A stretch of 64,000 bases of DNA from NCBI GenBank assembly GCA_973895155.1, contig OZ316899.1:5769241-5833240 (forward strand), written 5' to 3'. The notes under the pieces are model-generated. The model worked only from the letters and a program-made list of their open reading frames with translations, ran no database searches and was not told the DNA's origin. Position 1 is the first letter of the stretch. The number at the start of each line of letters is the position of its first letter. Origin of the DNA: Marsupella aquatica. Taxonomy: Eukaryota; Plantae; Marchantiophyta. This document shows positions 32,148 through 58,818 of this stretch, piece by piece. Made by a program: the position numbers and the translations under genes.

Positions 32148-35100
32148 TCACACTTGGTCACCTTCAATGTCCTCTACATCTGACACAAAAATAGTGTCTG
32201 GCTTGTCTGAAACAATGGAACGAGACCGTGGCACATATGTGATGACAAGTGACCACTCTGGGTCTAAGGGGTATGGAACGTAGAAACATTGCTCCAAGTG
32301 AGATGGGAAAGTAAATGGCTCTGACGTTTGCCAATGAGATGCTTGAAAACTAGTGGCACTTGTCCTCAACCGTGTAAACCCACTCTCATCTTGGAGTACA
32401 GTGCGATTATTACCAACAAGGTTCACTTTGAACCACTTGCACTTGAAGACATACTCCTCAAACTTAGATTGGTTGTCATATGAGACCACCAAAATCTCCT
32501 CTATCTTCCCATAGTGTGGCACAACATCACGAACAATGTTCCTGTCATGTCGGCTACTCTGGGAGTCCAGACAAAACTGCCCTTGAACTCCACAATCAAA
32601 AGTACGAGCCCTCTTCTCATCAAGGGAAGAAATCCTGAAATTAACAAGACCCATATATTGTTACTACTACACAAAAAACACTAATCATGTTATGAGGAAC
32701 CTTTCATACCAAAAGAGAAAAACACACTTATCTTAAGTAAAATGATTACTATATCTTAAGTAGTAGTACATGAATATGGAAAACAAGGTTAGGAACTAGT
32801 GAAACCTGAAGTGTCTCCCTTGGGTCCACATGGCCGTCTTGGATGTTACCACTCTCAAAGGGCCATGAACAATTGTCCAAGTGTCATTTGTCATAGTAGG
32901 AAACTGTGAGACATCTCCTCCTTGTGCCAAAATGCCATCCAACTCAACCAACTTTTCCTTCATAAACTCATGCAACTTAGGAAAAATCCTTGCCCTTTGA
33001 CTCATTCTTTTGGCATTGTCATAAAACTCCCTCCATTCATCCATGACATTGCTATTACTCAACATGAATGTATTCAACTGTGTCCACTCTGTTGATGTAA
33101 GCATGCGTGTTTTTGTTGCTCCTGTTAAACGGTCCTCCTCCTCTTGCCTCTCCTCCATCCAAGTACTGGTAAAGTCCGATCAATGGTGGCCAAGATGTTA
33201 CTACAATAAAACATGCTCTCTGCAGCCAAGTATCCTGTAGCTATGCTTCCCTCCACTCGTGCACGGTTACGTACATAAGCCTTCAAGATTGACATGTAAC
33301 GCTCAAGCCAGTACATCCATCGACAATGAACTGGACCAGCAATGGCAACCTCCCTCACAAGATGCACAAGTAAATGAACCTGACAATCAAAGAAGGAAGG
33401 AGGGAGGGCCTTCTCCAACTTGCAAACCACCTCAGCAGCCAATACCTCCATTCCAGGAATCTCTTCCACATATATCTCCTTTGAGCATATCCATCTCAAC
33501 AAACGACCCAATGACCAAATGGCATCTTGCACTTATTTGGTCCCCAACCCTATAATTGCCACTGGCAATATATGCTGCAATAAGCGGTGATAGTCATGTG
33601 TCTTGAGATACCGTGGCCATTTGTGATTGTCCTCCATCCCAAAAGCTTTCCTCAAATTGGCACCACAACCTGTAGGAAACCGCATCTCCCCTATACGATT
33701 CCGGAATTCACGTCTTTGGCCAACACTAAGCACCCAAGGAGCAGAAGGACGATGTTCCAAACCTGTGGCAGGATCAACTTGTACCCATACATCTGGATGC
33801 ATTTCCAACTCTTCACATGCCTCCCTGAAGTTAGTGTCCTTCTCCCCATAAAAATGAGCTATCAACGCCTTCCCCACATTTCCCTCTATGTGCATGGGGT
33901 CTAAAAGATGGCGGATCTTCAACTCTGACCAATAGGGCAAACTGGCTAGTATACTCCACCTCGTCAACCCAGTACCATCAAAGGTGAGGGGATCATCAGG
34001 GTCTGCCACCCTATCAGCTAGTGACTTCCAATGCCCAAAAGTTGTTGGTTCCGGAATTTCCCGCATATCACCAAGGGGCATGTCAAAGGAGGAAAATAAA
34101 AGTGGGTCAGACCTCATCTCATGCCCCATCGGAAGAAACTTTGTATGCCCAATGTAAACAATCTTCCTAAGCCATGGGGACCAAATTGCCATATCTTGCA
34201 ATTGTGGACCACAGGTGGAGCAAGCTTTGTACCCCTGAGTTTGCAATCCAGAGACAAAGCCAAACCCTGGTTACACCAAAAATAAAACCAGACTAAATGT
34301 TAGGGTTGTCACATGACAAACAAGTATATTAAAGAGCATATCAAAGAAGGGTGGCATATGGTCAAAAAGTCATCTTACCAGGATAGTCATGCATTGTCCA
34401 ACAAACTACCCCTCTCAATTTAAATACACGTGGAATGCCTCCTGTATTTTTCCTGCCATCATATGCCCACACTCCACCCCACAGTTTTTGGAGTTCTCCA
34501 ATCAATAGTGCCAAATAAGTGTCAAAGTTCTTCACCTTTTTTGGACCTGGAATAATCAAAGACAGCAAGAGGAACCCCTTCTTCATGGATAGCCATGGTG
34601 GAAGGTTGTAATTCATCACAACCACAGGCCAAACTGATGTAGGTCTTCCCTTGCCTCCAAGGGCATGAAGACTAACCCCATCAGATGCCAATCCCAACCT
34701 CACATGACGAGGATCATGTGCAAAGTCTGGCCATGTTTCCTCAATATGTTTGACTGCAGGAGAGTCAATTGGCAACCGCATAACACCAGGCTCTGATCGA
34801 TGAGTCTTATGCCATACCATCAACTCTGCCAAATCAGAACACCTGTACATGTGCAACAACCGAGGAATGATGGGAAACCAACGAACAGCTTTTCTTGGCA
34901 CCTTCTTTGTAATCATGTTGGGGTCATACCGTGGCTCATGACATTTAGTACATTGTGTCTTCTTCTCATCGGCCCCATGAAATAACATGCAATCATTCAC
35001 ACATGCATGAATGATATGATATTCCATGTCAATTGATGAGAGAACACGCTTGGCCTCCTTCCAAGTTCCTGGCAACACATTGCCAAAAGGTAACATAAGG

Positions 35101-36845
35101 TCATGGCAAAGTGCAAACATATCAGATAACAAGGCATTGCTTGCCTTGTGTTTGGCCTGTAGATTCATCAACCCCAAGATAGCAGAAAGACGACTCAAAC
35201 GAGCACCCTCATAGATAGGAGTTTGGGCATGTTCCTCTGCTTCCTCCCATTGGCGCTGTCCCTCGGGGGTATGTCTTGGTCGTGGATCATTGGGGGGCAC
35301 ATGACCTCCTTGATCAGCAGACACCTCAGCATCATCACCAGGGACGTCAACACCAAACCAATCAACCATAAAATCATCCATGGCTCTATCTTGGTCATCA
35401 ATAACCTGTTCATATGTTCTGGGTACATTGCGATCAGGGTTGTTGCTTCCACTGTCACTTGATGAGGAATGTGACTCAGAGCCTTGTCCTTCTTCCAGCA
35501 TACCCATTTCCCGATATGCTGCTCTCAATCTTCGCGGTAACATATTTTGAGAGGGTCGCACATTCTAAAAACAATGCAAACAATTGAAAGTTACAAAGCA
35601 AATAGTTACAACATGTAGAAGAATATATGGGGGTGTGCAAACATGAAATAATATCGGTACTGGTGTAAATACAAAATGTGGCCAAACGCCATGTGTATGG
35701 TCATTTTCTAATACCACACATAGTGAGTAAACAACTCATCACCTGAGTAGCTACAACCAGACAATGGTCATGATGATATGTCTGGCCATAAGGGGCTGGT
35801 GGAGGACCCTCAATGAAAACCCACTCACAATTTTGCCTACGCTTGGGGCGAGTCCCCACCGTACTGTTTATGAAACCAGCTATATTCCCAGTTCGTATGG
35901 GGTCCCCATCTATCACCCGCTGCTCACTATACCTCCTAGTGTTTCCATCAAAAGTATCTAACTCCAAGGCATAAGTCTTCCACTCAGGATGTTGTGCAAG
36001 GATCATGTTCCAATGTCTTCTCTTGTAGATGGGTCCACCATAAGGAAACAACGTAGGTCCTTCTCGACCGCGTCCACCACTACCACTCTCGGTATCCACA
36101 ATGATGTCTTCACAAGCAAAAACTCCATAGCCATGTCTATCCCCAAGTGTGGAAGGTTTGATAACCCAACGTCTTCCCCAAACCTCTACCTCCTCACCAT
36201 AGGAAAGCTCTTGTGGCAAACCAAGAGTCTGGGGATCCCAGTCCTTGATGATAGGAACACATCTGCTAGTAAACTCACAATCACCCCACCTACCGGTAAC
36301 CACTGCCTTGTACAAATCAGTATCCCCTCGGGGCCGTCTCTTGGAACGCTTTCTCCCTCTTGGGACAACAGGCTCACCCCCAACTGCCCTAGGACTAGAG
36401 GGGGCTGTTGCTAGACCCAAGGCTTGTGAGAATGCATTGCCTATAGCATCTAGAACACCTTGTGATGGGACATAAGGTGCTGATGCCGCAGGTCTAGGCC
36501 TACTAGATACCTTTTCCACCCAAACCAAAACAAACAACAAGAGGTGTGAAATTAAAAACCTTCACCATTGCGATGTGGAAATAGGGTAGAAACTAAGGCG
36601 TAAACACTTACCACATGGGATGAGGAAGCCCCTGTTGTATGACGTCCGTAACGTCCATATCTCTCAATATGCTGGGTGCATATATAGGACTTTTTGGAAA
36701 CCTGACCCACGCATTTGGCACATTGGCAAAGCTGACGGGGTGGACCACGAGGAGGAGGTGCAGTCATGTGAGGTTGAGGAGGAGGTGGTATATCTTCATC
36801 GGAGGAGGAAGAATCTGTGGTGGAGATCTCAGAAGATGAAGACAT
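32148..36845 (-). pseudogene. CACTA TnpD/Tnp2 transposase. Predicted exons 36845-36612, 35564-34379, 34266-~32810 and ~32636-32148; one stop and one frameshift
   Basis: IHACVNDCMLF, RLGLASDG, YNLPPWL, HDYP|GFG, HLLDPMHIEGNV, LKTHDYH, PPSFFD..HLLVHL, WMYWLERYM and YGKIEEI..FKCKWF; canonical GT/AG junctions. Confidence 0.92.
35709..36510 (-). CDS. SET-domain exon inside the first transposase intron (C-terminal motif frameshifted)
   Basis: IKPSTL..GYGVFA, YGGPIY, YALEL, IDGD..GNIAGFINS, NCEW and LVVAT, then GDELFTHYVWY* in a shifted frame. AG acceptor at 36512-36511 is in phase with exon 1. Confidence 0.8.
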
Positions 36846-45461: not shown

Positions 45462-47849
45462 CCTTTTCATAACATTTACTTCCAATCCTGAATGGCCTGA
45501 AATCATACTGGAATGCTACCCCTACCAGACCCCGGCCGACTGTGATGACATTGTTGCAAGAGTGTTCAAACTGAAGTTGAAGGCCTTGTTGGCGGATATT
45601 TGGGCAGGGGTATTAGGTAGACTTGTTGCCTCAATGTATGTCATTGAATTTCAAAAGAGGGGGCTACCGCATGCCCACATTCTGATAAGATTGGTGGAAC
45701 AACATAAGCTTTGCACCCCGGAGTTGGTTGACCAGTTGGTTTTGGCAGAGATACCGGATGCACGAGTACATCCCCAATTATATCAGACTATAATGAAGTC
45801 CATGGTGCATGGTCCTTGCGGCCGTGGGTATCCAAACTCACCTTGCATGGTTGACGGACAGTGCAGCAAGGGTTATCAGCAATCATTCTCAACCAAAACA
45901 GTTTTTGGAGATGATGGATATCCTTTGTATCGACGCCGGGATGATGGCCACAGTTTCTCAAAGGATTGCAACGGGTTTGAGTTTGACAATAGGTGGGTTG
46001 TTCCTTACAGTCCATATTTGAGCATGAGATTTAATGCTCATATCAATGGGGAGATTTGTTGCTCCATTAAAGCAATCAAGTATTTATATAAGTACTATTA
46101 TAAGGGGCACGATAAAGCAACGAGATGAAGTGAAGGAGCATTTAGATGCCAGGTATGTGTTTGTTGCTGAAGGAGTATGGCGCATTAATCAGTTTGAAAT
46201 GTCTGAGAGTACTACTTTGGTGCAATGGTTGCAAGTGCATTGTGAGGGGGAACAATTGATAATGTTCAATGAGGATTCAAAGATCAATGATGTGGTGCAA
46301 CGAGAATCTCACAGGGACACAACTCTCACAGGGTGGTTCAAAGCTAATGAATTGCATGAACATGCAAGAGAACTTTTATACAACAATTTCCCCCATGAGT
46401 TTGTATGGGATGCGTCGTCCCGTGCATGGAACCCATGAAGAAGAGGGTTTAGCATCGGTAGGATGTATTTTGTGCCGCCAGCCGCAGGTGAATGGTACTA
46501 CCTAAGGGCGCTTCTTCTTCACATCAAGGTGCAACATCGTTCATTGACCTTCGCACTTTTGAGGGCACTATATACCCAACTTTTCAGGTTGCGGCTCTTG
46601 TCCAAGGTTTGTATGAGAATGATGAGGAATGGGATAGATGCCTTCAAGAAGCGACAAGCATGCACACCGGGGCGCAAATGAGGCAACTATTTATTACAAT
46701 ATTATTGTTTGGAGGTGTTGCCAAACCGTGCGACCTGTGGACACAACATGCATCCAATTTGAGTGATGATTGTAGGCATTGTTTGCAATTGATGGGGTTC
46801 TTAGATTCAACGGAGCAACAACAACAGAGTTTTGCTCTATATTTGATGGATGAGGCTTTGAAAAGTGTTGGTAAAACATTGTTGGAGTTTAGTCTTCCGA
46901 AACCAGGTATGCAGTTTTTCCAAGAGGAGGTGAATAGAAATTGTTTGATAACAGAGGAGATATGTTATCCGATGGATGTCCTTCTACAACAACTTGCAGA
47001 ACAAGAGCCGTTATTGAATGAGGGTCAAAGGGCAACATACAATGCAATACTTGCAGCGGTTAGGACTCGAGATGGATCAACATACTTTATTGATGGACCT
47101 GGGGGGACGGGGAAAACTTTTGTGGAGAATGTTCTACTTTGGCGAGTCCGTGCAAATGGGGACGTCGCACTGGCCGTAGCTTCCTCGGGTATTGCAAGTC
47201 TTTTGTTAGATGGAGGACGCACAGCGCATTCATGATTCAAGCTACCATTGAAACCAATCTCGACATTGACATGTGCCATCCCAAAACAATCTGACCTTGC
47301 TGGATTATTGCAGAGGGCAACTTTTATTTTGTGGGATGAAGCACCCATGATTCATTGGCATGGAGTGGAGGCGTTGGATAGAACTTTATGCGATATAGGA
47401 GGTAATGACCGGATCTTTGGAGGGGTTGTAGTTGTATTTGCAGGAGATTTTTGACAAGTACTTCCAATGAAGGCAAGGGCAAGTCGTCCAAAGATTGTGG
47501 GGTCATGTTTGAAGAAGTTTTATATTTGGAGCTGTATATGGACTTTCAAGCTAACTGAAAATATGCAGGCAAGAGGAACTATTGCATCCCCTGAATTTGG
47601 TAATGTTACATTTCCGGAGTGGCTACTAAAATTGGGTGATGATAAACTCCCAAAGGGATGGTCTTCAAATAATCTAATTACTTGCCCTGAGTCTATGGTG
47701 GTGGATGGAGGACGTGTGGAATCATTGATTCATGCAATTTACCCATCTCTTGCTAATGTGGACAATAAGTTCTTAAGCAAGAGAACTATCTTGGTTCTGA
47801 CAAATGATGAGGCGCTAAAAATTAACGACTATATCTTAGAAGGACTTCC
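45462..47849 (+). pseudogene. Helitron RepHel: HUH-Y2 endonuclease and PIF1-like helicase
   Basis: [55 protein letters not shown] and AGDF*QVLP. Confidence 0.95.
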
Positions 47850-48488
47850 CTCGAGGGGGTCACTGTATGTAGGGCTCTACATCGCGTGCGACGTTTTAGG
47901 GTCTGGACCCCCTAACTTTTAAGTGAATTTTTTTTCCCCACTCCCTTACTTTCTGAAAAGCGGCCATTTTTTGAATTGTTTACCCCTATAAAACTTTATG
48001 GAAAGTTTTATGATGATTTAAAAAATGCCTATTAAGGAAAGTAAAGTACCTCAATAGTGTAGAGCCAATTGTGCAAATTGATGCGCATTTCCAATACATT
48101 CAATGAATTTGCATCTTGAAGCTGAATATCTTGTAATGCATTCATTGTCATCCAACAACTTGTAGTTTTCACTCTTGAATAGTGAAGCATGGTGGGTGCC
48201 AGATACTATGAATAGGTAACCGAACATCTTAGGTTGCCTATTCAAGGCATCGGTACTCTACCTTGTTTCACTATAAACTCCAGCATGATGATGTCCACAT
48301 CTCTACCTTCCTTCACAGACTCATGCAAGATGATGTCCACATGACGGAGGGGAATTGAACCCCTGATTGAGCATAAATCTCAATTTGCCAATCCGCCATC
48401 CCCTACTCTACTCCCTCCCACTAACCCTACACATGCATCACATACACACACAACAAACTACTTTTAATAAACAATAGTCAATTATATA

Positions 48489-51400
48489 TCACAATTTACT
48501 CACACTCTGAATGTATGCAATCAAAGCTTGCAAGTCACTTGCATCTAGTATATACACTTTGTCAACTATCCCAGACTTCATTGTCAAGTTCACATTTGAA
48601 ATTACCATCTCAATATCAATCCATTGTCCATCTGTTGCATCATAAGTGAACAAAGTTTTGTTGTTACCAGTAGATTTGTACCAATTACACTGCAAGCGGC
48701 ACACACTTCCACTCTGTCCAACTGCAGGTACAGGCCTGTCCAACAGATCTATTGCTTTCCGATGTCTGACCCAATAGGAGCCATTCTTCTGTATCATAAA
48801 CTCAATCCTACCCAACCAATATTCCTTCTTTGCAGATGTTGCGTCAACAACAGGCCCTTTATCTATTCCCTTCCTCTTCTTTGACTTGGATGATCTGGTA
48901 GAAGGACCAACCTCTGCAGCAGACTCAAACAAAACTGCTATATCAGTACCAATGTCAACCAAACAAGTCACAGAGTCACCATTTTCCTTCTCCTTACTAG
49001 TAGTGTAATAGGTCTTCTGGGCTATCCTAGTTAGCCTATCCTTTGACATGAAAGGATTGCAGCACAATTGACTCACAAAAGTGGACTTGTAGATAGTCCT
49101 TCCCTCATAAGTTATAGTAGACACTACTGACCGGGGTGTCTGCACATCAGTTAAGTCTGCTTGAACTCCAGCCAAGACATGCCTTACTTCATGTCCTAGT
49201 GTCTCCATCTCACAAAATGGGTTAGTGTCCACCTCAATCGAACAATCATCAACTGTTAGTGGCTCAATACAATCCTGACTGTCCAGAGTGTCCCATGAAT
49301 CAATCCGATTGAGATCTTCTTCAGGATCTTCAAACTCTAGAAACTCTCCAATTGGGGGCTCAGGTCTAGGGCCTACAATAGATCGATGCTCAACTGTGTC
49401 TTCAGCATCATCACATAACACAACCTCTTTCATGACACTTGTATCCGGCCAAGTCTCTGCCTCCACCTCCCAAGGATGAACCCACCATCGTCTTTTTGCT
49501 GCTGGCAAAGAACTCCTTGGTGACATGTTCAGCTTGCACAACAAATCCTTTGCTTCCTGCAAACCTTCCTTTAGAGCATCAACAACCATCTCATTAGTCT
49601 GAACTGCAGAGTAATCAAATAAATTTGGAGCTTGTTCTCCTTCATCCAGAGGATGTAAAGTTGCCCAAACATGATCCTGTTTATCATGTGATCGACGTAT
49701 CTTCAATCCCTCTGGTCCATACTCTAATCCAGCTAGTCGATTCAGTCCCACTGCACTGTCCAGTCGAGATCCAAAGTCATAATTTCTCTCATGGCCACTC
49801 ATGCCACCTACCTTGCTAAAAAATATTTCACAACAATCTGATCCCAACAAGTGAAATGGAACTTGCAGATATGGGAACTTGTCCCGAAAGGCACAGATTA
49901 ACAATACTACAAAATGACAAGACATGTTGATATCATGGAAAACCTGCACAGAAATCATGTTCTTCTCTGTGATAGATCCAGCATTCCCTATCACAGAATG
50001 ATCACCATACCTCAACCATAGCCTCCACAATTGGAAGAACCAAGATACCTTTGATGCCAAGACAACACGGGTTCTTAGGTCATGCTTAACAGAGAAGAAA
50101 ATATCCATGTAGTCTGCACAAACCTCCAAGTATATCATGGTCCCAAAGCTTCTATCATGACGAACATCTCGTCGCTCATACATATGCTGCAGGCAGGCCT
50201 ACACTCTCCTGGAAGCTATTCATTGTGGGCCAGCCCAGTTTTGTCTATCTGTCCTATTCACATCATCCCAATGCAAACCATGCTCATGAATTGCATAATG
50301 GTTATAAACAGATGTGACATATGACAAAGATGCATGCTGATCACCAAGAACTAACATAGCAGACACTCGGTCCAATGGGTTAATTGCCTTCTTGCCATTG
50401 TGAGGTGGGTCTTGGTCTCCAAAACCATATCGATCTCCATTCGGAAGTATGGACACTGAGTATTGCCACCCAACCCATCCTACACTGTACCTAGGAAAGG
50501 AATCATTCACAGCAGTATAATCTTCCATCATCAATTTCCTACGACGAGCATCACCATCACTAGCATGGCCCAACAAAGGACCAACACTGTCTTTGCAATG
50601 TGTGTTCCACATGGACTTCAGCTGCACCCAATGCTCTCTTACCCAGGGAGCTCTAAACTTGTTACATGTTGGTAGAACACACAATGCCAATTTAGGCATC
50701 TTTGCATGCAGAGGATTGACAATGATTACTCTAGCATACATGTCTTTGGCATATTGCTCAAAAGTACTTACAATCTTGTCATACCCTTCAATACCTGCTC
50801 CAACCAGTACTTCCAAGCCAAAAGAACATGTGTGCTCCTCTAAGGGGCCACAGAAACCAATGAGGGTGTCATATTTAGCTTCCCATCTGTCACACACAAT
50901 ACAAAACACACATCAGCTCATGACGTGCAAACTCATCCAACACATTCAAAAGAACAAGCTAATTTACTACAGAGACAAAAACACAAACCTGGGTCTCTCT
51001 TTTATCCTTGTTTCATCCTCAACAAACATTACTGGTACATCTCCTGAAATTCCAAGTGTCTGCTTTGATGCACATAGTACTCTGCACACCTCCTGGAATA
51101 TCTCTTTTCGAATGCCAACTCTAAAGGGTGGTAGTTTTGCTCTATCACGTTTCAAGGTCTTTAGACCTGGACCACCTAGGTTTGCCTGGAAACAATGAGC
51201 CACTTGTCTACCTCCAAACTGGAACATGGCTTGGGAAAAGGCCTTGGTTCTCTTACTGTATCGATAACCCTTAGCAACTCTTTGCAAGTTCTTAGCTACA
51301 TCTGTCAGGAAATCCCACAACCCTTCCTTGCCACCAAAAGCACCACGCCTATGTCCATTCACAATATTTCTCAGAAACAGTCTTAAATCTTTCCTATCAT

Positions 51401-53084
51401 GGGCTACTCCTAATAAATCTTCTAGCTTCTTTCGCCTAACACTCAAGGCACAAATTTTCTGAGCTTGTTGTGCCAACAGCCAACGCTGTTTCCTAAAGCA
51501 AGTGTTGAGGTTACCAACATGTTCCCTCAGTTTGGTTTTGGTCAAGTATGCCAACCTCATCCCACCCTGTGTAGTCCTGTCTCCTCTCTGCACTAATGCT
51601 TCCGCTTCCCTGTGCACCCTGCCACAAAAATCATCTTCACGTTTTATTGAATCACATAGAGTGCAAGTGAGGTTTTGAAAACCACCTCCATTAATGGACA
51701 CCCTGTGACATTGCTTGTGCCTAAAACAACCCTGTATACCAACAACTGACTGGCTAGTTACATTGAAAACCTCAGCACAGGTGGTACGGTCACAGTCCCA
51801 AACATTCCCTCCCTCTTGATCATCAAGTATGCCCTTCACAGCCATAGAATCCCCTGTCCACTTGACCTCTGACTCCCATAGGCCCCAACAAAGCAAACTT
51901 AAACTTGGCTCAATGGAGGAATACAACCCACCTCTGCCTGAACTGCTCCCTGCAGCAGAGCTGTCCTCTCTAAAGAAATTCAGAATAGAATTTTGAGATG
52001 GAAACAGATCACGAGCATCAGGCTTTCTTGGTCTCCCCTTCTTCCCTGCCCTCAGTGCAGCCTGGGTACTGGTGACGACATTCTCAAGTGCATCCATATG
52101 ATCCCGACTGACAAGGTGTTGCCTTAAATTGTGTTCCAAATTGGATTTCTTAGGGCACATGTCAGTATGTAGCTTGCCACAGACTGTACATCTAACCTTA
52201 AACAGGAATGACCTCTGTGCAAATGTTGGATCAGTGGGAGATGGTGTGATAGAGAACACTTCTACCACGCCACCTACCTCTGCATTCAACTTTCCAACTA
52301 TTTCCACACCAGCCCCTATTTGCATACTATGATCAAACAGTGGTTGCTGTATAGTGTCAGCAGGCGTCACCAAAGCTCCAGCTAAACCCCTTCGCTTACA
52401 CCAGTTCTCCTTGTGTTTAGGGTTGGTCAGGTGCTTTGTCTTGAAGTTGCTAAAGCAATTTGCGATGGACTTGAGCACCTGTGAAGTGGCTGCATTCCCA
52501 TAAGTCTCCCTACACTCTAAGCATTCTAGATGACCTCGACACTCCCCTCCCTCATCCCATGTTTGCACTTTCCACTTGTGCTCACCAAAGCCCTTCTGGT
52601 TCACCCAGGATCGTAGCTTCAACCACTCATCATTCCAGGCCTTTGATGCAGCCTCAAACATGAGGTGAGACTCAAAGGAGCCTGTGACAGGCTGTATAGT
52701 CGCCTGTACTGGCACCCCTTGTGTTTGTCCTTGAGACAATGGAGTCATGCCTACCACATTGGACACAGTGGCAGCAGATGAATGAGAGGAACCAATAGTG
52801 ATCCTCTCAGCAAGCAAGGCAACTGAGGGTAACTTTGCAATCACGTAAATTGTCCCTTGAAGTTCAGTCACCCCAACAGTCTTCTCTGAAAAGCGTCGGA
52901 CTCGACCAGGCAACCTCTCATCCCAAAAATCAAAGTCAAACTCTACTGCACCAACACATTTCAGACGAAAATCTGCTAGAGTCTGCCCTTCTTTGAAGGA
53001 CATGACACAGATTGGTGTATCAGGCTTTCCTCCCTCCTCACCCTTTTCTACCAATCTGACAGAGCTCATGCCTAGGTGTGCCAT
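48489..53084 (-). pseudogene. About 1500-aa P-like DDE transposase; intron 50887-50988; two C-to-T-type nonsense codons at about 50200-50222
   Basis: Candidate catalytic motifs VEDET, ASDGDARRR, DQDPPHNGKK, DRQN and GSDCCEIFFS. The intron joins PR|WEAKYD in frame. Confidence 0.8.
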
Positions 53085-53459
53085 GATGGACAGTTATACA
53101 GGCTCTGAAAGTAAGGGATAGGGATTAGGTACATGAACCTGTCATACAACAATGGACAGACATGGAAAAAGATCAGGACTCAAGTCAACCATTCACAATG
53201 TCATTTGAACACTCAATCTATTGTAGTCAATGAAACTTACTTAAGTCCATTTCAGTTCATCAAACTTCCACTTCGTTCAACCAAATACTTAAGTCCATTT
53301 CATTCATCGAAATACTTAAGTCCATAGCATTCAACCAAATACTTAAGTCAATCCATAGCATTCAACCAAATACTTAAGTATAATTTAGGTTGTCTTATGG
53401 GTCCACTACAAAAAAGGTTCAAGTTATAAGATGGTGGAATTAGTAGCAGTCATGCTAGT

Positions 53460-54185
53460 CTAGTCATGGGTACTTGGGATATCAGAACCCTCTGGGATGA
53501 CATGGCAAGTATAGTAAATCATGCGCCACTGTCCAATGTCCCAGGTGTCTCGGCCCCTCACCCTTCTCCTCAAGTGCTTGTCTGTTGTTGGTCCTTCATC
53601 ACAACACCATGCACGAGGGCATCTACGACATTGGACAAAATCCCAAATGCCCTCCCGATACTCCTTACAGACCTCACAGTAATGTCGTGGGCATATAAGA
53701 GCATCAGGATGTGCATCAAGGTTATCTGGATGGCGGGTGAAAGGCATTTCCCCCAATCGCAGAAGTGTCCGAAGACAACCCACATGGTAAAATGAGTAGC
53801 AGTCATCATGAGAACATTGGATCACAAGGGGCTCGTCTGTGGTGGGTCTCAAGGTTCTGCCAAGGAGTCCACAACCAAAACATCTTCCTCTGTTTTGCTG
53901 ACAGAGGTCACAAAGCCAAGCTGCAGCCCAATCATGACCTCTGGAAATGACAATCCGCTGACATGTAGGTCCATGGCCATCTTCCTCATCGGGGTTGTGA
54001 CCATCAACTACATAATGAAAATGGCAACCACAAGGGCCATCACAAAACAAAACAGCTCCTCCCTCATCACATTCAAAACAGCAAGGGGGATCCATATGAA
54101 GGTGCTCCCTATGCCCAAATCTTGGATCCAGCAACTGACTAGCAATGTGTGCCATGCTGAACAAGATCTGCAAAATTACCTTCAA
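53460..54185 (-). CDS. EDM2/NSD-type multiple PHD-finger module carried by the P-like element
   Basis: CFECDEGGAVLFCDGPCGCHFH..WLCDLC..CFGCG..CSHDDCYSFYHVGC..CPRHYCEVC..QCRRCPRAW..RMIYYTCHVI. Confidence 0.85.
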   Translation of the reverse strand: MKVILQILFSMAHIASQLLDPRFGHREHLHMDPPCCFECDEGGAVLFCDGPCGCHFHYVVDGHNPDEEDGHGPTCQRIVISRGHDWAAAWLCDLCQQNRGRCFGCGLLGRTLRPTTDEPLVIQCSHDDCYSFYHVGCLRTLLRLGEMPFTRHPDNLDAHPDALICPRHYCEVCKEYREGIWDFVQCRRCPRAWCCDEGPTTDKHLRRRVRGRDTWDIGQWRMIYYTCHVIPEGSDIPSTHD

Positions 54186-55098
54186 AAATTAGGGGCAGGC
54201 AGAGGGGCAGGCATGTGATGTACCAGAAGGAGCGATAGTCTACCAACAATCATAGCCAGTAGGCACCACCAGGGGCATGACTTCCCTGTGGGCTCCTTTG
54301 ATCCATCCTGCAATGTGAGCAATGCAGAATCAAAAGTCAACAACTTGAGTGTGCATCACCATCATGGGCAGAACCTGGACGTGTCCCACCACAGACACAA
54401 TCATTGATGAAATGACAGGTGTTCCACGCCAGGCAACCACCCCATGACATTCTTGCCATGTACTGTGCAAAAGTCTGCACTATGTTAGAGTCACCTCCCC
54501 TACAATGATCACATGTCTGGGTGTGACAATGGAGACAAGCCTCCAAGAAGACACGGTCCTCATCCAGCACCCCATCTGTCTGTTTAACTAGACGGATACT
54601 GTTTGGGGCTGGTGGGGATTACTTAGCCTCCGGTAATGGTTGCGAGGCACAGATGGATAGCCCCAGGTCACAGCACAGTCTGTAGGCACGATCCCAAAAT
54701 GGATCATCTTCACACGAAAGTGCTCACCCTTCTATCGATGGTACTCAGACAATACACTGCGTGTGACAACCATCTTCAGTGCAGTACACAAGAGATTGTG
54801 CCCACTCCAACAAAATGACAAGGCCACAACAAACAAGGTATCAGGATTGACCTTAGCAAGGGCCTGAACACAACCTCCCCAATTCCCGACTTCTACCAAT
54901 TGATCCCTGCAAGAAAGAAAGGGAGTTGAAGTTATATTTCATGCATACAAGTATCAAACAAACATACAGAGTAGACAGTGTCCAAAAATAGACAAACTCC
55001 TATATGCAAACATTTGCATCAGACAAGCAGGTCTTTATTATGTAAACTGCACCAAACACAGGGATACACTTGGAAAACGTAACCAGTCCTATATACAC

Positions 55099-55554
55099 CT
55101 GCGTTTTGGTATGATCAAGTTTACACTTTGCCAAAGGGCATTTGCCTCATCCTGTTTAATCATTTCTAGGTTCCTCTTGGTATTGTGAGCCTCAGATTCT
55201 ACCTCAGTCAACATTAAGTTGAAAGGGCCTTCTTGCAGACGTACCCCTACCTTTAAGGATTCACACATCCATTCAAATGAGACAACTTTCATTGCCTGAT
55301 TTTGAACAAAGTGATTCACATCAGACCAGGACCATGTGGACAGGACTGCTTTCCATGAATCGGCAACAATGTGAGTGGTCTTGGTGGATAGAATATCACA
55401 TTGTCCACCATGACGTTCTATCAGCTTTCTATGAAAGACTTGAAAACGAGCTTTGGAAAATCCATTTTGAACTAAGATGGTTCACACCTTGGAAAATGGG
55501 GTTTGATACTGAACTAGGTGTGGCTTTTTGTGGAATGGCTTGTCTACAACTCAT
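55099..55554 (-). pseudogene. BRCT-domain exon (Pol lambda-like) with one frameshift near 55480
   Basis: IFQGV/ILVQNGFSKARFQVFHRKLIERHGGQC..TTHIVAD..VVSFEWMCESLKVGVRLQEGPF. Confidence 0.75.
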
Positions 55555-56589
55555 GGTACACTAAACCATAAACTATACGAAACCGTCTGCTGCTCTGCAA
55601 CAAAATGAAGCTTACTTGAATCCTCCAAACAGATGCCTAGAATTGCTGCTCTGTGATAATTCAATACAAAACCCCTGCACAAGTCCCACACACAACAAAA
55701 AGCTCAATAAAACATCAATAGTCTCAACATACACCAAAAGCTTTGTACAGTGAAAGTGAATGAGGACCGCAAACTCTCTCACTGTGACACTCTTTACAGT
55801 CTCACCAGAAATGCTTTGAAAAACAAAAATGCCAGGTTAAATAAACTGCGCAGGTAAAAAAAACCAGGTTCTCTATCACATTGACAAACAAGCTTTCTTT
55901 CATAGTCCGAGGGTCTGTCTGTCTACTATCAGTTTTCTGCTAACATGTTCCAACTCTGATAGTAGACCCCCCTTGAGAGACTGTCAGTTTTTTGCTAACT
56001 ATGTGCATTCTGCTAAGCCAAGCTGCAAGTAAACATAGTTAGCAGAATTTCATTCACTTTGGAACCCACAAAAAGAGTTGCTATATATGAATAGCAATGT
56101 TCTTACCTTCACAGCACAGTCAGTGCAGGATTGGATTGGATCTGATTTGGATGGCAAGCACCGATCACAACGAAGATCAAGCACCGATCACCAACCAAGC
56201 AGCACTCACCAAGAAAGCACCGATGTCTCTTGCTGAGTTCACCCTAAATGGACAATCTTGCCAATGCGAGTGGGGATCAGATGCACAACTTTTTAGAAGC
56301 TTCTATAACTGAACAAGCTGGATTTCAGGGTGGCTCTTTTCAAGGCAATGCAAGCACATAGGCTTGTGACTGTGACAACATAGACTCTGTTTGTATGGAA
56401 ACTTCCAATTACAAACTCACAGGAGTGATAGATTCTAACCTGGCAGATCAAACACTTCCTTCTATCTTCCGCCCTCACCAAGCATCCCTTCTGGGTCCGC
56501 GTCTGTCTGCAAGCAATATCACGCAGCTCAACCCCGCAACTAAAGAACCAGACAACAACAGACATCCAGCCAGCATCGCCCTCCGGACC

Positions 56590-57210
56590 TCTTCAATGAA
56601 AGGAAAGACCACGTTGCAAGTACAGAGGAAATGCTAGCAAAAATTAGCAACATCAATGTGGGACAACATTTGCAATAGGAGCGACCTCCAAGGGGACATA
56701 GAAGCTCAGAGTGTCACCTTCTTTCTGCCAATCCGAGCTCTGTAAAGTAGTGTTTGAAACCAAGTAGCAGTCGACCTCCACACGCCTCCACAGTCTACCT
56801 ACTCTCCAAACTTGCACAACAACATTCCTTCCGCCCTCCGAACTTGCCGCAACAGTAGTCCTCCCAATTGTCTCAAAGAGAATGGACGGACCTCTAAAAC
56901 CGTGGCAGCAACAGTCCTTGTGGTCTCCATAGTTGACTACAGCTCCAGCTTGCAGCAGCTTGCAGCAATCAACCTTTGTTTTCTCACAAAGAACATGGAG
57001 AACCTCTGAACTCGCGCCAACAACAATCCTCCCGACCTCCTCAATCAACTAGAGCTCCTCTTGAATGAAACGAAAAGACCACGTCGCAGGCAAAGAGGAA
57101 ATGCTAGCAAACAAATAGCAATTGACATCAATGTGCGGTAGCATTTGCAAGAGGAGCAACCTCCAAGGGGCTACATAAGCTAGGAGCATCACCTGCTTTC
57201 CGCCAACCTT
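56590..57210. repeat. Imperfect ~150-bp direct duplication (about 56590-56735 and 57060-57210)
   Basis: Both copies contain AAGACCACGT...GAGGAAATGCTAGCAAA...ACATCAATGTG...ACCTCCAAGGGG. Confidence 0.7.
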
Positions 57211-58222
57211 TCTCTGTAGCGTTGTCGTCCTCCTAACACATATCAGAAAGAAACATAAGAAGAAGCAGTACGCAGGGAAACAAGCAAAAAGCTATGGTGG
57301 AAACCTGCTCAGTTTCTATCAAGCTTGATCCAAACCAAGTAACAGTTGGCCTCGACAATGTACCTCCTCTGAAAACTTGCACCAGAACTCGTGGCAACAA
57401 CAATACTCAGTCTACCCCAATCCTCTCCTCGGTCCTCTCCTATGTCGCGGCAGCGCAGCGCAGTCGAATGATCCTCCAAAGTCACGGCAGCGCAGCGCAG
57501 TCCCGATTGTCACGAAGAAATTAAACTTGAAGATCCTCCAATGTCACGGTAGCGCAGCGCAGCCCTCTCGATTGTCACAAAGAGAGTCACGGCAGCGCAA
57601 TGCAACCCTCCCAATTCGCACAAAGAAAGTGAACATTGAGTTTGAAACTCAATGTTCGCGCGTCCTCCCCCATCCTCGGGCCCACAATCCCCATCTCTAA
57701 AGCCGCCACCCGGGCCATTATTAACCGTTCAATCTTAAACCCTAAACATGGACGGCCCTCGCAAACCCCGAGTGGTATCATTGTTCCCCCGAGGGTCCCT
57801 TAACCCACTTTAGACCCCGTCCCAATAAATCAAAAACTGAAATCCTTCACAATATAGTTTTTGGACAAAAGTTTGGTTACAATAGGGCAAAAATTGAAAC
57901 ATTCATGTTGCAGCAAAAAATCATATGTACCACCTAAAACCACGTGTTGCAATTACATGGAGACACGTGGTCCAACCTAAACATGACCCGTGTCGCATGA
58001 ACATATGGCAATAAATTCCCTAACTTTCCTGGACACCTTCCGTGGAATATGTCCCATATAAAAAATGCCTATTGTTCTTTAAAGCATCCCAACAATTAAA
58101 ACGGACCCTTTTGTTCTTCCACCAAACTTTGGAAGTCTTCCGCTGAACCCAATTAAATGGCCCTATACTTCGTCGCACGTGATGTGGCACTTTCGTGGAA
58201 GTGACCCCCCCGAGGGACTTCC

Positions 58223-58580
58223 CAGGGAATCAACTGAGTTCCTTAGCGTTGATCGTCCGGATCAACTTGAAGGGGAGAATTTCTACCCTACATAGTTCTT
58301 GAATACACTCACGCCAAGTGGTCTGCCACCTCATAAGTTGGTACTCAAGGTTGGATGCCCTATCATTTTACTTAGGAATATAGATCACTCTTTGGGATTG
58401 TGTAATGGCACTCGACTGATTGTGAAAGCCATGAGTCGTCGTGTCATTGAGGCACGAGTTCTTGCAGAAAAACATGCAGGGACCCTTACATTTATCCCAC
58501 GCATTCCATTGACATCTGATGAATCACTTCCCTTTTTATTACGTAGGGTCCAATTTCCCATCCAAGTGGCATATGCATAT
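58223..58580 (+). pseudogene. Helitron helicase C-terminal part, truncated before the TINKSQG motif
   Basis: GLPPHKLVLKVGCPIILLRN, GLCNGTRLIV and RRVQFPIQVAYA. Confidence 0.92.
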
Positions 58581-58589
58581 GCCACTTTA

Positions 58590-58818
58590 CCTCTCTCAAC
58601 ATCTTCCTCGCCTTGACAACTTTACCTCTATCAACATCTTGCCCTTGCCGCAATATATTTCCCTCACCTTGAAATCTTGCTCTCACCTTGACATCTTGCC
58701 TTCACCTCAACATCTTGCCCTCGCCTCAACATCTTTCCCTCACCTTGAAATCTTGCCCGCCTCAACATCTTGACCTCGCCTCAACATCTTGCCATCCCCT
58801 CAGAATCTTGCCCTCACT
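58590..58818 (+). repeat. Degenerate ~18-bp tandem repeat in the Helitron 3' region
   Basis: Recurring CCTCAACATCTTGCCCTCG-like units. Confidence 0.75.

What the first reader, a model, noticed from the sequence alone, without database searches (positions are those of the whole stretch)
53460..54185. Transposon-borne EDM2-like PHD reader
Seen: three consecutive Cys/His clusters ending in CRRCPRAW...TWD...RMIYYTCHVI. Known: Arabidopsis EDM2 has this atypical PHD array, reads H3K9me2-containing marks, and with ASI1/IBM2 and AIPP1 allows full-length transcription through heterochromatic introns. Inference: the element captured a heterochromatin reader that may help its own expression or targeting, or act as a decoy. 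A further degenerate Cys-rich exon at about 54340-54906 may belong to the same gene.
Basis: partly seen in the sequence, partly recalled or inferred. Interest (0 to 1): 0.85.

Follow-up and report, generated by a model that had tools for sequence, protein, structure and literature searches.

The report
Transposon-carried EDM2-type histone-reader gene
A 10.4-kb cut-and-paste transposon of a liverwort-type plant genome carries, just ahead of its transposase gene, a small separate gene made only of the triple zinc-finger "histone-reading" module of the host anti-silencing factor EDM2, and the transposon lineage has kept that gene under selection, so it probably uses a chromatin reader of its own.

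Summary
Window 53460-54185 is one open frame of 241 codons (231 aa from its conserved ATG) with three Cys/His fingers.

It passes Pfam PHD_NSD. A three-sequence profile matches 208 proteins over the whole ~205-residue array, including Arabidopsis EDM2 (E 6e-14, residues 223-425). The predicted fold matches the NSD1/2/3 PHD5-C5HCH tandems. It has no other EDM2 domain (no RFD, no Mtase_EDM2).

The gene sits inside a discrete element, 47850-58214, with 15-nt TIRs and an 8-bp target duplication (GGACTTCC). The element interrupts a Helitron helicase gene and is multi-copy in two organisms' sequencing runs.

The carrier's transposase-type protein matches the GTP-binding insertion domain of the Drosophila P-element transposase (Z 11.8, next hit 4.3). 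So the carrier is P-like, not CACTA.

The PHD-then-transposase layout recurs in a 65%-identical copy. More distant relatives (Riccia, one Logan copy) lack the gene. dN/dS is 0.26-0.36, the same as the adjacent transposase ORF. The gene has no introns, whereas the host array has about five.

This copy is decaying: two in-frame stops in the transposase and a Cys-to-Tyr change at one zinc ligand. Reader function is inferred, not shown.

Earlier notes of this scan report similar PHD genes in this genome on CACTA elements. I did not check those.

The parts
47842..47849 (.). Left copy of the 8-bp target-site duplication, GGACTTCC
   Evidence: Read directly. The identical direct repeat lies at 58215-58222.
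47850..47864 (+). Left terminal inverted repeat, CTCGAGGGGGTCACT
   Evidence: Inverted-repeat pair I2, read. A second conserved subterminal module, ACATCGCGTGCGACG, lies at 47879-47893.
48489..50183 (-). ORF564, the C-terminal part of the transposase-type protein
   Evidence: 31 homologues, mostly Riccia liverworts. It is 57% identical to the intact 774-aa protein P0006. The P0006 model matches the GTP-binding insertion domain of the P-element transposase at Z 11.8. The ESM Atlas lead is PF21789/PF21788.
50220..50909 (-). ORF229, the middle part of the transposase-type protein. It is in the same frame as ORF564 and cut off from it by one in-frame stop at 50220-50222.
   Evidence: In L004/L005 the equivalent of ORF229+ORF564 is a single 774-aa ORF. 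The frame arithmetic comes from the coordinates.
50967..53084 (-). ORF705, the N-terminal part of the transposase-type protein, with BED-like CxxC...H...H motifs. It is in the same frame as ORF229, with a stop at 50967-50969.
   Evidence: Homologues P0003, P0004 and P0005. P0004 (936 aa) aligns as one HSP across ORF705 and ORF229, 53018-50202. No Pfam hit.
53085..53459 (-). Poorly conserved spacer between the PHD gene and ORF705
   Evidence: 375 nt here and 299 nt in L009, with only patchy ~70% identity.
53460..54185 (-). Stand-alone EDM2-type triple-PHD gene: 241 codons open, with the conserved 'MA' start at 54155. Finger 1 is residues 36-95 (54080-53901), finger 2 is 102-168 (53882-53682), and the derived finger 3 is 170-228 (53678-53502).
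54235..54322 (-). Strongly conserved upstream block with a short uORF-like ATG. It may be a 5'UTR, promoter or upstream exon.
   Evidence: About 90% identical to L009, against 74% for the coding sequence. No RNA data.
58200..58214 (-). Right terminal inverted repeat, CTCGGGGGGGTCACT on the minus strand. The subterminal module lies at 58171-58185.
   Evidence: In each of runs X1 and X2, 12-15 contigs break off exactly at 58214 into unlike flanks.
58215..58222 (.). Right copy of the 8-bp target-site duplication, GGACTTCC
47467..47841 (+). Left half of the interrupted Helitron PIF1 helicase gene (the insertion target)
   Evidence: PF05970 PIF1, profile positions 158-218 of 223.
58299..58616 (+). 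Right half of the interrupted Helitron PIF1 helicase gene
   Evidence: PF21530 Pif1_2B_dom, E 5.7e-19.

Best explanation
The 241-codon minus-strand ORF is an accessory gene of a P-superfamily-like DNA transposon family of liverwort-type plants.

It encodes a free-standing ~230-aa protein that consists only of the triple PHD array found in EDM2-family proteins (PHD-1st, PHD_NSD, variant PHD). In EDM2, the protein's H3K9me2 binding is attributed to its PHD fingers.

The lineage acquired the array once from a host EDM2-family gene. The best candidate donor is the liverwort Mp1g03210-type paralogue. The array may have come through a spliced transcript, because it has no introns here.

The lineage has kept the gene directly upstream of the transposase gene under purifying selection.

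Inferred mechanism: the protein binds histone H3 tails at the element's own chromatin or at target chromatin. It would either compete with or redirect host readers (anti-silencing or decoy), or tether the transposition machinery to a particular chromatin state.

Shown: identity, fold, location in the transposon, linkage, selection.

Inferred: histone binding and benefit to the element.

This particular copy is a decaying relic. Its transposase has two in-frame stops and one zinc ligand is mutated.
For: Identity:
- Pfam PHD_NSD passes the gathering score.
- The profile hits 208 proteins over the whole array. The top non-TE hits are liverwort proteins at 97-112 bits. The Arabidopsis EDM2 cluster scores E 6.3e-14.
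- Hit proteins of about 1250-1330 aa that were scanned (seven, among them the Arabidopsis EDM2 cluster's representative and two named EDM2-like) carry DNMT1-RFD followed by the three NSD-type PHD models.
- All ligands of fingers 1 and 2 are invariant.
- The AlphaFold model (pLDDT 72, pTM 0.71) best matches NSD2/NSD1/NSD3 PHD5-C5HCH, including the NSD3-H3K9me3 complex, at probability 1.0.

Transposon-borne:
- TIRs and an 8-bp TSD.
- The element splits a Helitron helicase gene whose two halves flank it.
- Hundreds of contigs at 85-99% identity in four runs from two organisms. Many of them end at 58214. The PHD region is covered as deeply as the transposase ORF.

Carrier type:
- P-element transposase GBD at Z 11.8, rmsd 2.8 A over 168 residues; the next hit is Z 4.3.
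- Foldseek's top two hits are both the P-element transposase.
- The Atlas lead is THAP9-type families.

Linkage and capture:
- L009 has the PHD gene and then the ORF705 N-terminus at 65% identity. P0001's contig has the same layout.
- The gene is absent from the 10 kb upstream of two Riccia copies and from the 1.2 kb upstream of L004.
- Host proteins match only the PHD ORF.
- The host array has about five introns and sits in conserved synteny.

Selection:
- omega is 0.26 (NG86) or 0.36 (YN00), against 0.27 and 0.21 for the transposase N-terminus. Third-codon positions change about twice as often as the others.
- ORFs at 56-66% identity are intact and start and stop at the same places.

EDM2's H3K9me2 binding and its '2 1/2 atypical PHD fingers' are taken from PMC7529245.
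Against: - There is no RNA evidence. All four runs are DNA contigs, so expression and transcript structure are unknown.
- Finger 3 is derived in all transposon copies: the conserved His is replaced by Cys and the next Cys is lost. This copy also has Cys-to-Tyr at residue 225. The model is less confident there.
- The array sits on a very long branch of about 3.3 changes per column.
- The donor is not secure. A 121-row quick tree puts the TE clade outside all land-plant arrays. A 37-row careful tree puts it inside the liverwort Mp1g03210 group at 100/100. The AU test does not reject the outside position (p 0.31).
- The P-superfamily assignment rests on the fold of one domain and the TSD length. 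No Pfam or PDB sequence match and no THAP domain were found.
- Only three coding sequences were available for dN/dS, and dS is saturated for two of the three pairs.
Confidence: 0.8

Rival explanations
1. The PHD frame is not a separate gene. It is the first coding exon of the transposase gene, spliced to ORF705, so the transposase carries an N-terminal histone-reading array that directs integration. This would resemble chromodomain integrases or the PHD finger inside Rehavkus transposases.
For: The two ORFs share a strand and a conserved order, and only 300-375 nt separate them. A PHD finger inside a transposase has precedent in Rehavkus elements (PMC6446971). Transcript structure is unknown.
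Against: The PHD frame ends at the same place in three subfamilies, and its C-terminal tail is conserved almost up to the stop. ORF705 and its homologues in L004 and L009 align from their own Met-1. The spacer is poorly conserved and varies in length.
Confidence: 0.12
2. The array is a passenger: a host gene fragment picked up by the element, as in Pack-type capture, and carried along with no function for either the element or the host.
For: This copy has a mutated zinc ligand, and finger 3 is degenerate in the whole lineage. L009 has a premature stop. Six private changes listed in this copy's PHD ORF show no third-position bias.
Against: omega is 0.26-0.36 between subfamilies, equal to the transposase. 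The 16 ligands of fingers 1 and 2 are invariant at 56-66% overall identity. Intact ORFs share start and stop positions. The PHD region is as well conserved among copies as the transposase ORF, and about ten times better covered than the 54.6-57.9 kb region. Decay of single inserted copies is expected for any transposon gene.
Confidence: 0.05
3. The direction of transfer is reversed. The liverwort-specific Mp1g03210-type host genes arose by domestication of the transposon's PHD gene, and the transposon did not copy a host gene.
For: In the careful tree the TE clade is sister to Mp1g03210 plus Riccia, inside the liverwort group (81/35 within a 100/100 group).
Against: The array is ancient in hosts. 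Green algae have it together with Mtase_EDM2. The host genes carry about five introns within the array and lie in conserved synteny, which points to vertical descent. The TE stem is very long and its placement is unstable.
Confidence: 0.03

Closest known systems
Arabidopsis EDM2 (ENHANCED DOWNY MILDEW 2) and EDM2-like plant proteins
   Same: Both have the same three-finger array (PHD-1st_NSD, PHD_NSD, PHDvar_NSD), alignable end to end with EDM2 residues ~223-425.
   Different: The window protein has no DNMT1-RFD, no Mtase_EDM2/ELP domain and no acidic or proline-rich regions. It is about 230 aa against about 1300 aa. Its gene has no introns, is multi-copy and lies inside a transposon. Finger 3 has a changed ligand set.
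Liverwort Mp1g03210-type proteins (Marchantia polymorpha Mp1g03210, Riccia sorocarpa R1sor_003797, Calypogeia fissa, M. paleacea)
   Same: These are the highest-scoring relatives of the array (97-112 bits, 33-36% identity). They group with the TE copies in the careful tree.
   Different: They are single, syntenic host genes of 620-770 aa with the array at the C-terminus, interrupted by about five introns. Their N-terminal ~500 residues have no counterpart in the element.
NSD1/NSD2/NSD3 PHD5-C5HCH tandem modules (PDB 2naa, 9gbf, 4gnd-4gng)
   Same: They are the best structural match to the model (probability 1.0, TM to target 0.5-0.64, 25-26% identity). NSD3's module binds the H3 tail, including H3K9me3.
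   Different: Sequence similarity is only marginal (E 5.5). The window protein has no SET or PWWP domains. The NSD proteins are animal methyltransferases, not plant proteins.
Transposon-encoded chromatin tools: VANDAL VANC anti-silencing factor, PHD finger in Rehavkus transposases, TET/JBP genes in fungal DNA transposons, chromodomains of chromovirus integrases
   Same: In each case a mobile element carries its own chromatin-directed protein or domain (PMC6446971; PMC12730594; the chromodomain example is from general knowledge).
   Different: None of these is an EDM2-type triple-PHD array encoded as a separate gene. My literature searches found no report of one.
P element / THAP9 transposase superfamily
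   Same: Both make an 8-bp TSD and have short TIRs. The carrier's transposase-type protein has a domain that superposes on the P-element GTP-binding insertion domain (Z 11.8).
   Different: The carrier's protein is about twice as long (~1500 aa). No THAP domain and no Pfam TNP-like match were found. My searches found no report of P elements in liverworts.

Membership tests
EDM2 family (whole protein) | Triple atypical PHD array (PHD-1st_NSD + PHD_NSD + PHDvar_NSD) | tested here: met
   The profile aligns positions 34-238 to EDM2 223-425 at E 6.3e-14. Pfam PF22908 passes its cut-off. Finger 3 is derived.
EDM2 family (whole protein) | N-terminal DNMT1-RFD-like domain | tested here: not met
   It is present in the seven 1237-1332-aa hit proteins scanned (among them the Arabidopsis EDM2 cluster's representative and two named EDM2-like). 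It is absent from the 241-aa ORF and from the rest of the element.
EDM2 family (whole protein) | C-terminal N6-adenine-methyltransferase-like ELP domain (PF26055 Mtase_EDM2) | tested here: not met
   There is no Pfam hit in the ORF. EDM2 aligns nowhere else in the window. The model does detect the domain in an algal relative.
EDM2 family (whole protein) | Binding of H3K9me2-marked chromatin and action with ASI1/IBM2 and AIPP1/EDM3 | not testable with these tools
   This is known for Arabidopsis EDM2 (PMC7529245). It needs biochemistry or genetics.
NSD histone methyltransferases | SET catalytic domain and PWWP domains | tested here: not met
   Pfam finds only PHD-type matches.
NSD histone methyltransferases | PHD5-C5HCH tandem fold | tested here: met
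   Foldseek's top hits are 9gbf, 2naa and 4gnf/4gnd/4gng at probability 1.0.
P / THAP9 DNA transposon superfamily (the carrier) | 7-8-bp target-site duplication and terminal inverted repeats | tested here: met
   An 8-bp GGACTTCC repeat flanks 15-nt TIRs. The terminus is confirmed by contig break points.
P / THAP9 DNA transposon superfamily (the carrier) | GTP-binding insertion domain within the RNase H-like catalytic domain | tested here: met
   VIA-align gives Z 11.8, rmsd 2.8 A over 168 residues, against 6p5a residues 338-529. The next hit is Z 4.3. The model's overall pLDDT is only 57, but it is 70-95 in the matched region.
P / THAP9 DNA transposon superfamily (the carrier) | N-terminal THAP DNA-binding domain and sequence match to TNP-like Pfam families | tested here: not met
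   No Pfam hit even at E 10. No PDB sequence or profile hit. The ESM Atlas gives only a feature-level lead.
P / THAP9 DNA transposon superfamily (the carrier) | Catalytic DDE/D triad in an RNase H fold | not tested
   The N-terminal 138 residues of the P0006 model and ORF705 were either not confidently modelled or not modelled at all.
CACTA / En-Spm superfamily (the carrier, as named in other notes of this scan) | CACTA termini, 3-bp TSD, Transposase_21 (TnpD) | tested here: not met
   The termini are CTCG..., and the TSD is 8 bp. Pfam finds no Transposase_21 in the element's long ORFs (ORF705, ORF229, ORF564), and tblastn with the window's own CACTA transposase finds nothing anywhere in the element.

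The most novel reading that the evidence does not exclude
The same small EDM2-type reader gene circulates among unrelated DNA-transposon superfamilies in one genome. It is P-like here and reportedly CACTA at many other loci of this genome. On this reading it is a portable chromatin module that transposons exchange and keep because it counteracts, or exploits, H3K9me2-based silencing.
Probability: 0.3. Interest if true: 0.8.

Novelty: new variant of a known kind. Interest (0 to 1): 0.62.

Why it matters
Plants silence transposons through H3K9me2 and DNA methylation. EDM2 is a host factor that reads that mark to keep genes with heterochromatic introns working.

A transposon lineage that has carried its own copy of just the reading module, under selection, over a long time suggests a counter-strategy or a targeting strategy. 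As far as my searches show, none of this type has been described.

It also gives a compact, natural 'reader-only' protein whose histone specificity and effect on silencing can be tested directly in Marchantia or Arabidopsis.

The carrier would also extend P/THAP9-like elements to liverworts.

Tried and rejected
- Plus-strand reading of the coordinates: broken by a stop.
- PDB sequence searches with the ORF and with its profile: only marginal hits, KDM5B at E 0.049 and NSD3 at E 5.5.
- Pfam on the three long downstream ORFs and on five homologues: nothing, even at E 1-10.
- PDB sequence and profile searches for the transposase: nothing.
- The proposed extra exon at 54340-54906 and the BRCT-like ORF at 55089-55319: no Pfam hit and no similarity to EDM2-family proteins.
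- Bacterial-type promoter and terminator scan: at chance level and irrelevant for a eukaryote.
- Metagenome scan for more loci: 295 pattern matches, none confirmed.
- P0104 cluster, suspected to be a second TE-borne array: it is a marine-alga EDM2-like protein with Mtase_EDM2.
- Marchantia Mp4g03050, a free-standing 280-aa array: no transposase within 10 kb, and the gene has introns.
- AU test on the 121-row tree: not finished after 572 s. It was replaced by the test on 37 rows.
- RNA evidence: no run is on record as RNA.
- Findings look-up by sequence: blank.
- Joined protein: I built no joined model of ORF705+ORF229+ORF564. The pieces were searched separately, and the intact relative P0006 was folded instead.

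Full report
**Observation.** The reported coordinates hold one open reading frame, but on the minus strand: 53460-54185, 241 codons from the first possible start. The plus strand is interrupted by a stop. The translation contains the quoted motifs and three Cys/His clusters.
- Pfam PF22908 (PHD_NSD) matches residues 101-168 at E 3.3e-8 and 34.2 bits, above the 23.9-bit gathering score.
- A similar-length search of 5.8 billion proteins finds two relatives. P0001 is 247 aa and 66% identical. P0002 is 226 aa and 56% identical. Both carry PF22908.
- All three share a conserved 'MA' start, the same stop position and every Cys/His of the first two fingers.

**What the array is.** A profile of the three sequences was searched against 1.84 billion representatives. 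It finds 208 proteins at E<=1e-3, and the alignments span the whole array, profile positions about 34-238.
- The best hits outside the transposon clade are liverwort proteins at E 1e-27 to 1e-22: Marchantia polymorpha Mp1g03210, Riccia sorocarpa R1sor_003797, M. paleacea, Calypogeia fissa and Mp4g03050.
- The cluster that contains Arabidopsis EDM2 is hit at E 6.3e-14 over EDM2 residues 223-425. Proteins named 'ENHANCED DOWNY MILDEW 2-like' from Mangifera and Salvia are also hit.
- Pairwise tblastn of Arabidopsis EDM2 against the window gives 29% identity over 165 residues, E 4e-11.
- Seven 1237-1332-aa hit proteins that I scanned, among them the representative of the Arabidopsis EDM2 cluster, share the architecture DNMT1-RFD, (PHD-1st_NSD), PHD_NSD, PHDvar_NSD. 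The window protein has only the array.
- An algal relative shows that Pfam also has an EDM2 methyltransferase model, PF26055. That domain is absent here.
- A ligand map shows all 16 zinc ligands of fingers 1 and 2 invariant between the transposon copies, liverwort proteins, EDM2 and algal proteins.
- Finger 3 is derived in all three transposon copies. The conserved His of 'AWH' is Cys, and the following Cys is lost. This window's copy additionally has Tyr where the others keep Cys, at residue 225.
- An AlphaFold model built on a 20-sequence alignment has mean pLDDT 71.8 and pTM 0.71, with block means of mostly 78-93 (68 in one block) across fingers 1-2.
- Its best structural matches are the NSD2, NSD1 and NSD3 PHD5-C5HCH tandems, including NSD3 bound to H3 and H3K9me3 peptides (probability 1.0, TM to target 0.5-0.64).
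- At sequence level NSD3 is only marginal (E 5.5).

**It is inside a transposon.** An inverted-repeat pair lies 10.3 kb apart.
- Read base by base, the ends resolve into 15-nt TIRs at 47850-47864 and 58200-58214. A second conserved subterminal module lies about 15 nt further in. An 8-bp direct repeat, GGACTTCC, flanks both ends at 47842-47849 and 58215-58222.
- The element splits a Helitron helicase gene. The left flank ends in PIF1 profile positions 158-218, and the right flank resumes with the Pif1 2B domain.
- Four public runs from two organisms hold the stretch as hundreds of short DNA contigs at 85-99% identity.
- In each of two runs, 12-15 contigs break off exactly at 58214 into unrelated sequence.
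- The PHD ORF is covered as heavily as the adjacent long ORF, and about ten times more heavily than 54.6-57.9 kb.
- So this is a multi-copy family, and the PHD gene is part of its conserved core.

**The carrier.** Downstream on the same strand lie ORF705, ORF229 and ORF564, all in one frame and separated by single stops at 50967-50969 and 50220-50222.
- A Logan protein, P0004, aligns as one HSP across ORF705 and ORF229.
- In locus L004 the equivalent of ORF229+ORF564 is one intact 774-aa ORF, P0006.
- The window copy therefore has a decayed transposase.
- Homologues are numerous in Riccia sorocarpa and R. fluitans, and one occurs in a fern.
- No Pfam or PDB sequence match exists.
- The ESM Atlas pointed to THAP9/P-element families as a lead.
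- A model of P0006 has overall pLDDT 57, but 70-95 over residues ~140-325 and 75-95 over ~380-450.
- Foldseek's two best hits among 350,000 chains are both the Drosophila P-element transposase, at weak E values.
- VIA-align gives Z 11.8, rmsd 2.8 A over 168 residues, against transposase residues 338-529. That is the GTP-binding insertion domain. The next hit is Z 4.3.
- With the 8-bp TSD, this supports a P-superfamily-like element.
- The element is not CACTA. The termini and TSD do not fit, Pfam finds no Transposase_21 in its long ORFs, and the window's own CACTA transposase matches nothing in the element.
- I built no joined ORF705+229+564 protein. The pieces were searched separately.

**Linkage and capture.**
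- Locus L009, from another sample, has the PHD gene at 75% nucleotide and 65% amino-acid identity. About 300 nt later comes the ORF705 N-terminus, also at 65%.
- L009's PHD frame carries one premature stop.
- P0001's contig has the same layout.
- tblastn finds no PHD in the 10 kb upstream of two Riccia copies, nor in the 1.2 kb upstream of the 55%-identical L004 copy. The gene therefore marks one sub-lineage.
- Host EDM2-family proteins align only to the PHD ORF, 53472-54128, and nowhere else in the window.
- Mp1g03210 and its Riccia orthologue lie beside the same KH/CCCH gene, so they are syntenic host genes. About five introns interrupt their array. The element's array has none.

**Phylogeny.**
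- In a 121-row quick tree the three transposon copies form a 99% clade on a stem of 3.3 changes per column. That clade lies outside a 97% clade of 111 plant arrays.
- In a 37-row careful tree the copies group with the liverwort Mp1g03210-type clade at 100/100.
- An AU test does not reject the outside position (p 0.31).
- The liverwort paralogue is thus the best, but unproven, donor candidate.

**Selection.**
- Between the window and L009 the PHD gene has dN 0.22-0.24, dS 0.67-0.85 and omega 0.26-0.36.
- The adjacent ORF705 N-terminus gives omega 0.21-0.27.
- Third-codon positions differ about twice as often as first or second positions. For the pairs with L001, dS is saturated.
- Six sites listed in the PHD ORF, where all or nearly all laid contigs differ from this copy, show no third-position bias. 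That is expected for neutral decay after insertion.

**Upstream region.**
- The Cys-rich ORFs at 54337-54906 and the BRCT-like ORF at 55089-55319 have no Pfam hits and no similarity to EDM2-family proteins.
- A ~90-nt block at about 54235-54322 is more conserved than the coding sequence and holds a short uORF-like ATG. Stops separate it from the PHD frame.

**Mechanism.**
- Shown: a stand-alone EDM2/NSD-type reader module, transposon-borne, linked to the transposase gene and under purifying selection.
- Inferred: it binds H3 tails, and it serves the element either by interfering with or redirecting host readers, or by tethering transposition to a chromatin state. I cannot separate these two roles.
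- Because the protein lacks all other EDM2 domains, it should not be assumed to recruit EDM2's partners.

**Context in this scan.**
- Earlier notes on this same genome repeatedly report a 226-aa EDM2-type PHD gene on CACTA transposons, sometimes in a cassette with a Cys-rich ORF and a BRCT gene.
- I could not check those loci. Here the carrier is P-like.
- Either the cargo is shared between superfamilies, or the carriers elsewhere need re-examination.

**Literature.** My searches found no report of an EDM2-type array as a transposon gene, and none of P-type elements in liverworts. The nearest precedents are VANC, the Rehavkus PHD finger and TE-borne TET/JBP genes.

Noticed in passing
window 54235-54322 (minus strand): A ~90-nt block upstream of the PHD ORF is about 90% identical to L009, against 74% for the coding sequence. 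It contains a short conserved uORF-like ATG (MD.RSPQGSHAPGG) preceded by TTGCAG. It may be a 5'UTR, uORF, promoter element or upstream exon.
   Followed up: partly
window 47850-58214: The carrier element is P/THAP9-like by fold (GTP-binding insertion domain, Z 11.8) and by its 8-bp TSD. It has many relatives in Riccia liverworts and one in a fern. My literature searches found no report of P-type elements in liverworts.
   Followed up: partly
window 50967-50969 and 50220-50222: Two in-frame stop codons split what is a continuous or two-part long ORF in relatives (P0004, P0006). This copy's transposase is broken while its PHD ORF is still open.
   Followed up: yes
window 45562-47922 and 58299-58616: A Helitron (Helitron_like_N, PIF1 helicase, Pif1 2B domain) is the insertion target and is split by the element.
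   Followed up: yes
window 58113-58300: Contig word depth jumps about 10- to 100-fold just at and beyond the element's right end. The flanking Helitron is therefore a far more abundant repeat than the element.
   Followed up: no
window 34362-36845: A CACTA element (Transposase_21, E 3e-36) lies 12 kb away and carries no PHD gene.
   Followed up: no
L006 and L007 (Marchantia Mp1g03210, Riccia R1sor_003797): This liverwort-specific 620-770-aa paralogue has the EDM2-type array at its C-terminus and about 500 N-terminal residues with no Pfam domain. It is syntenic between Marchantia and Riccia. I did not search for any functional study of it.
   Followed up: partly
window 55089-55319 (minus strand): This 76-aa ORF has a BRCT-like look (VVSFEWMCESLKVG...), as another note of the scan suggested. 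It has no Pfam hit even at E 10 when scanned alone.
   Followed up: partly
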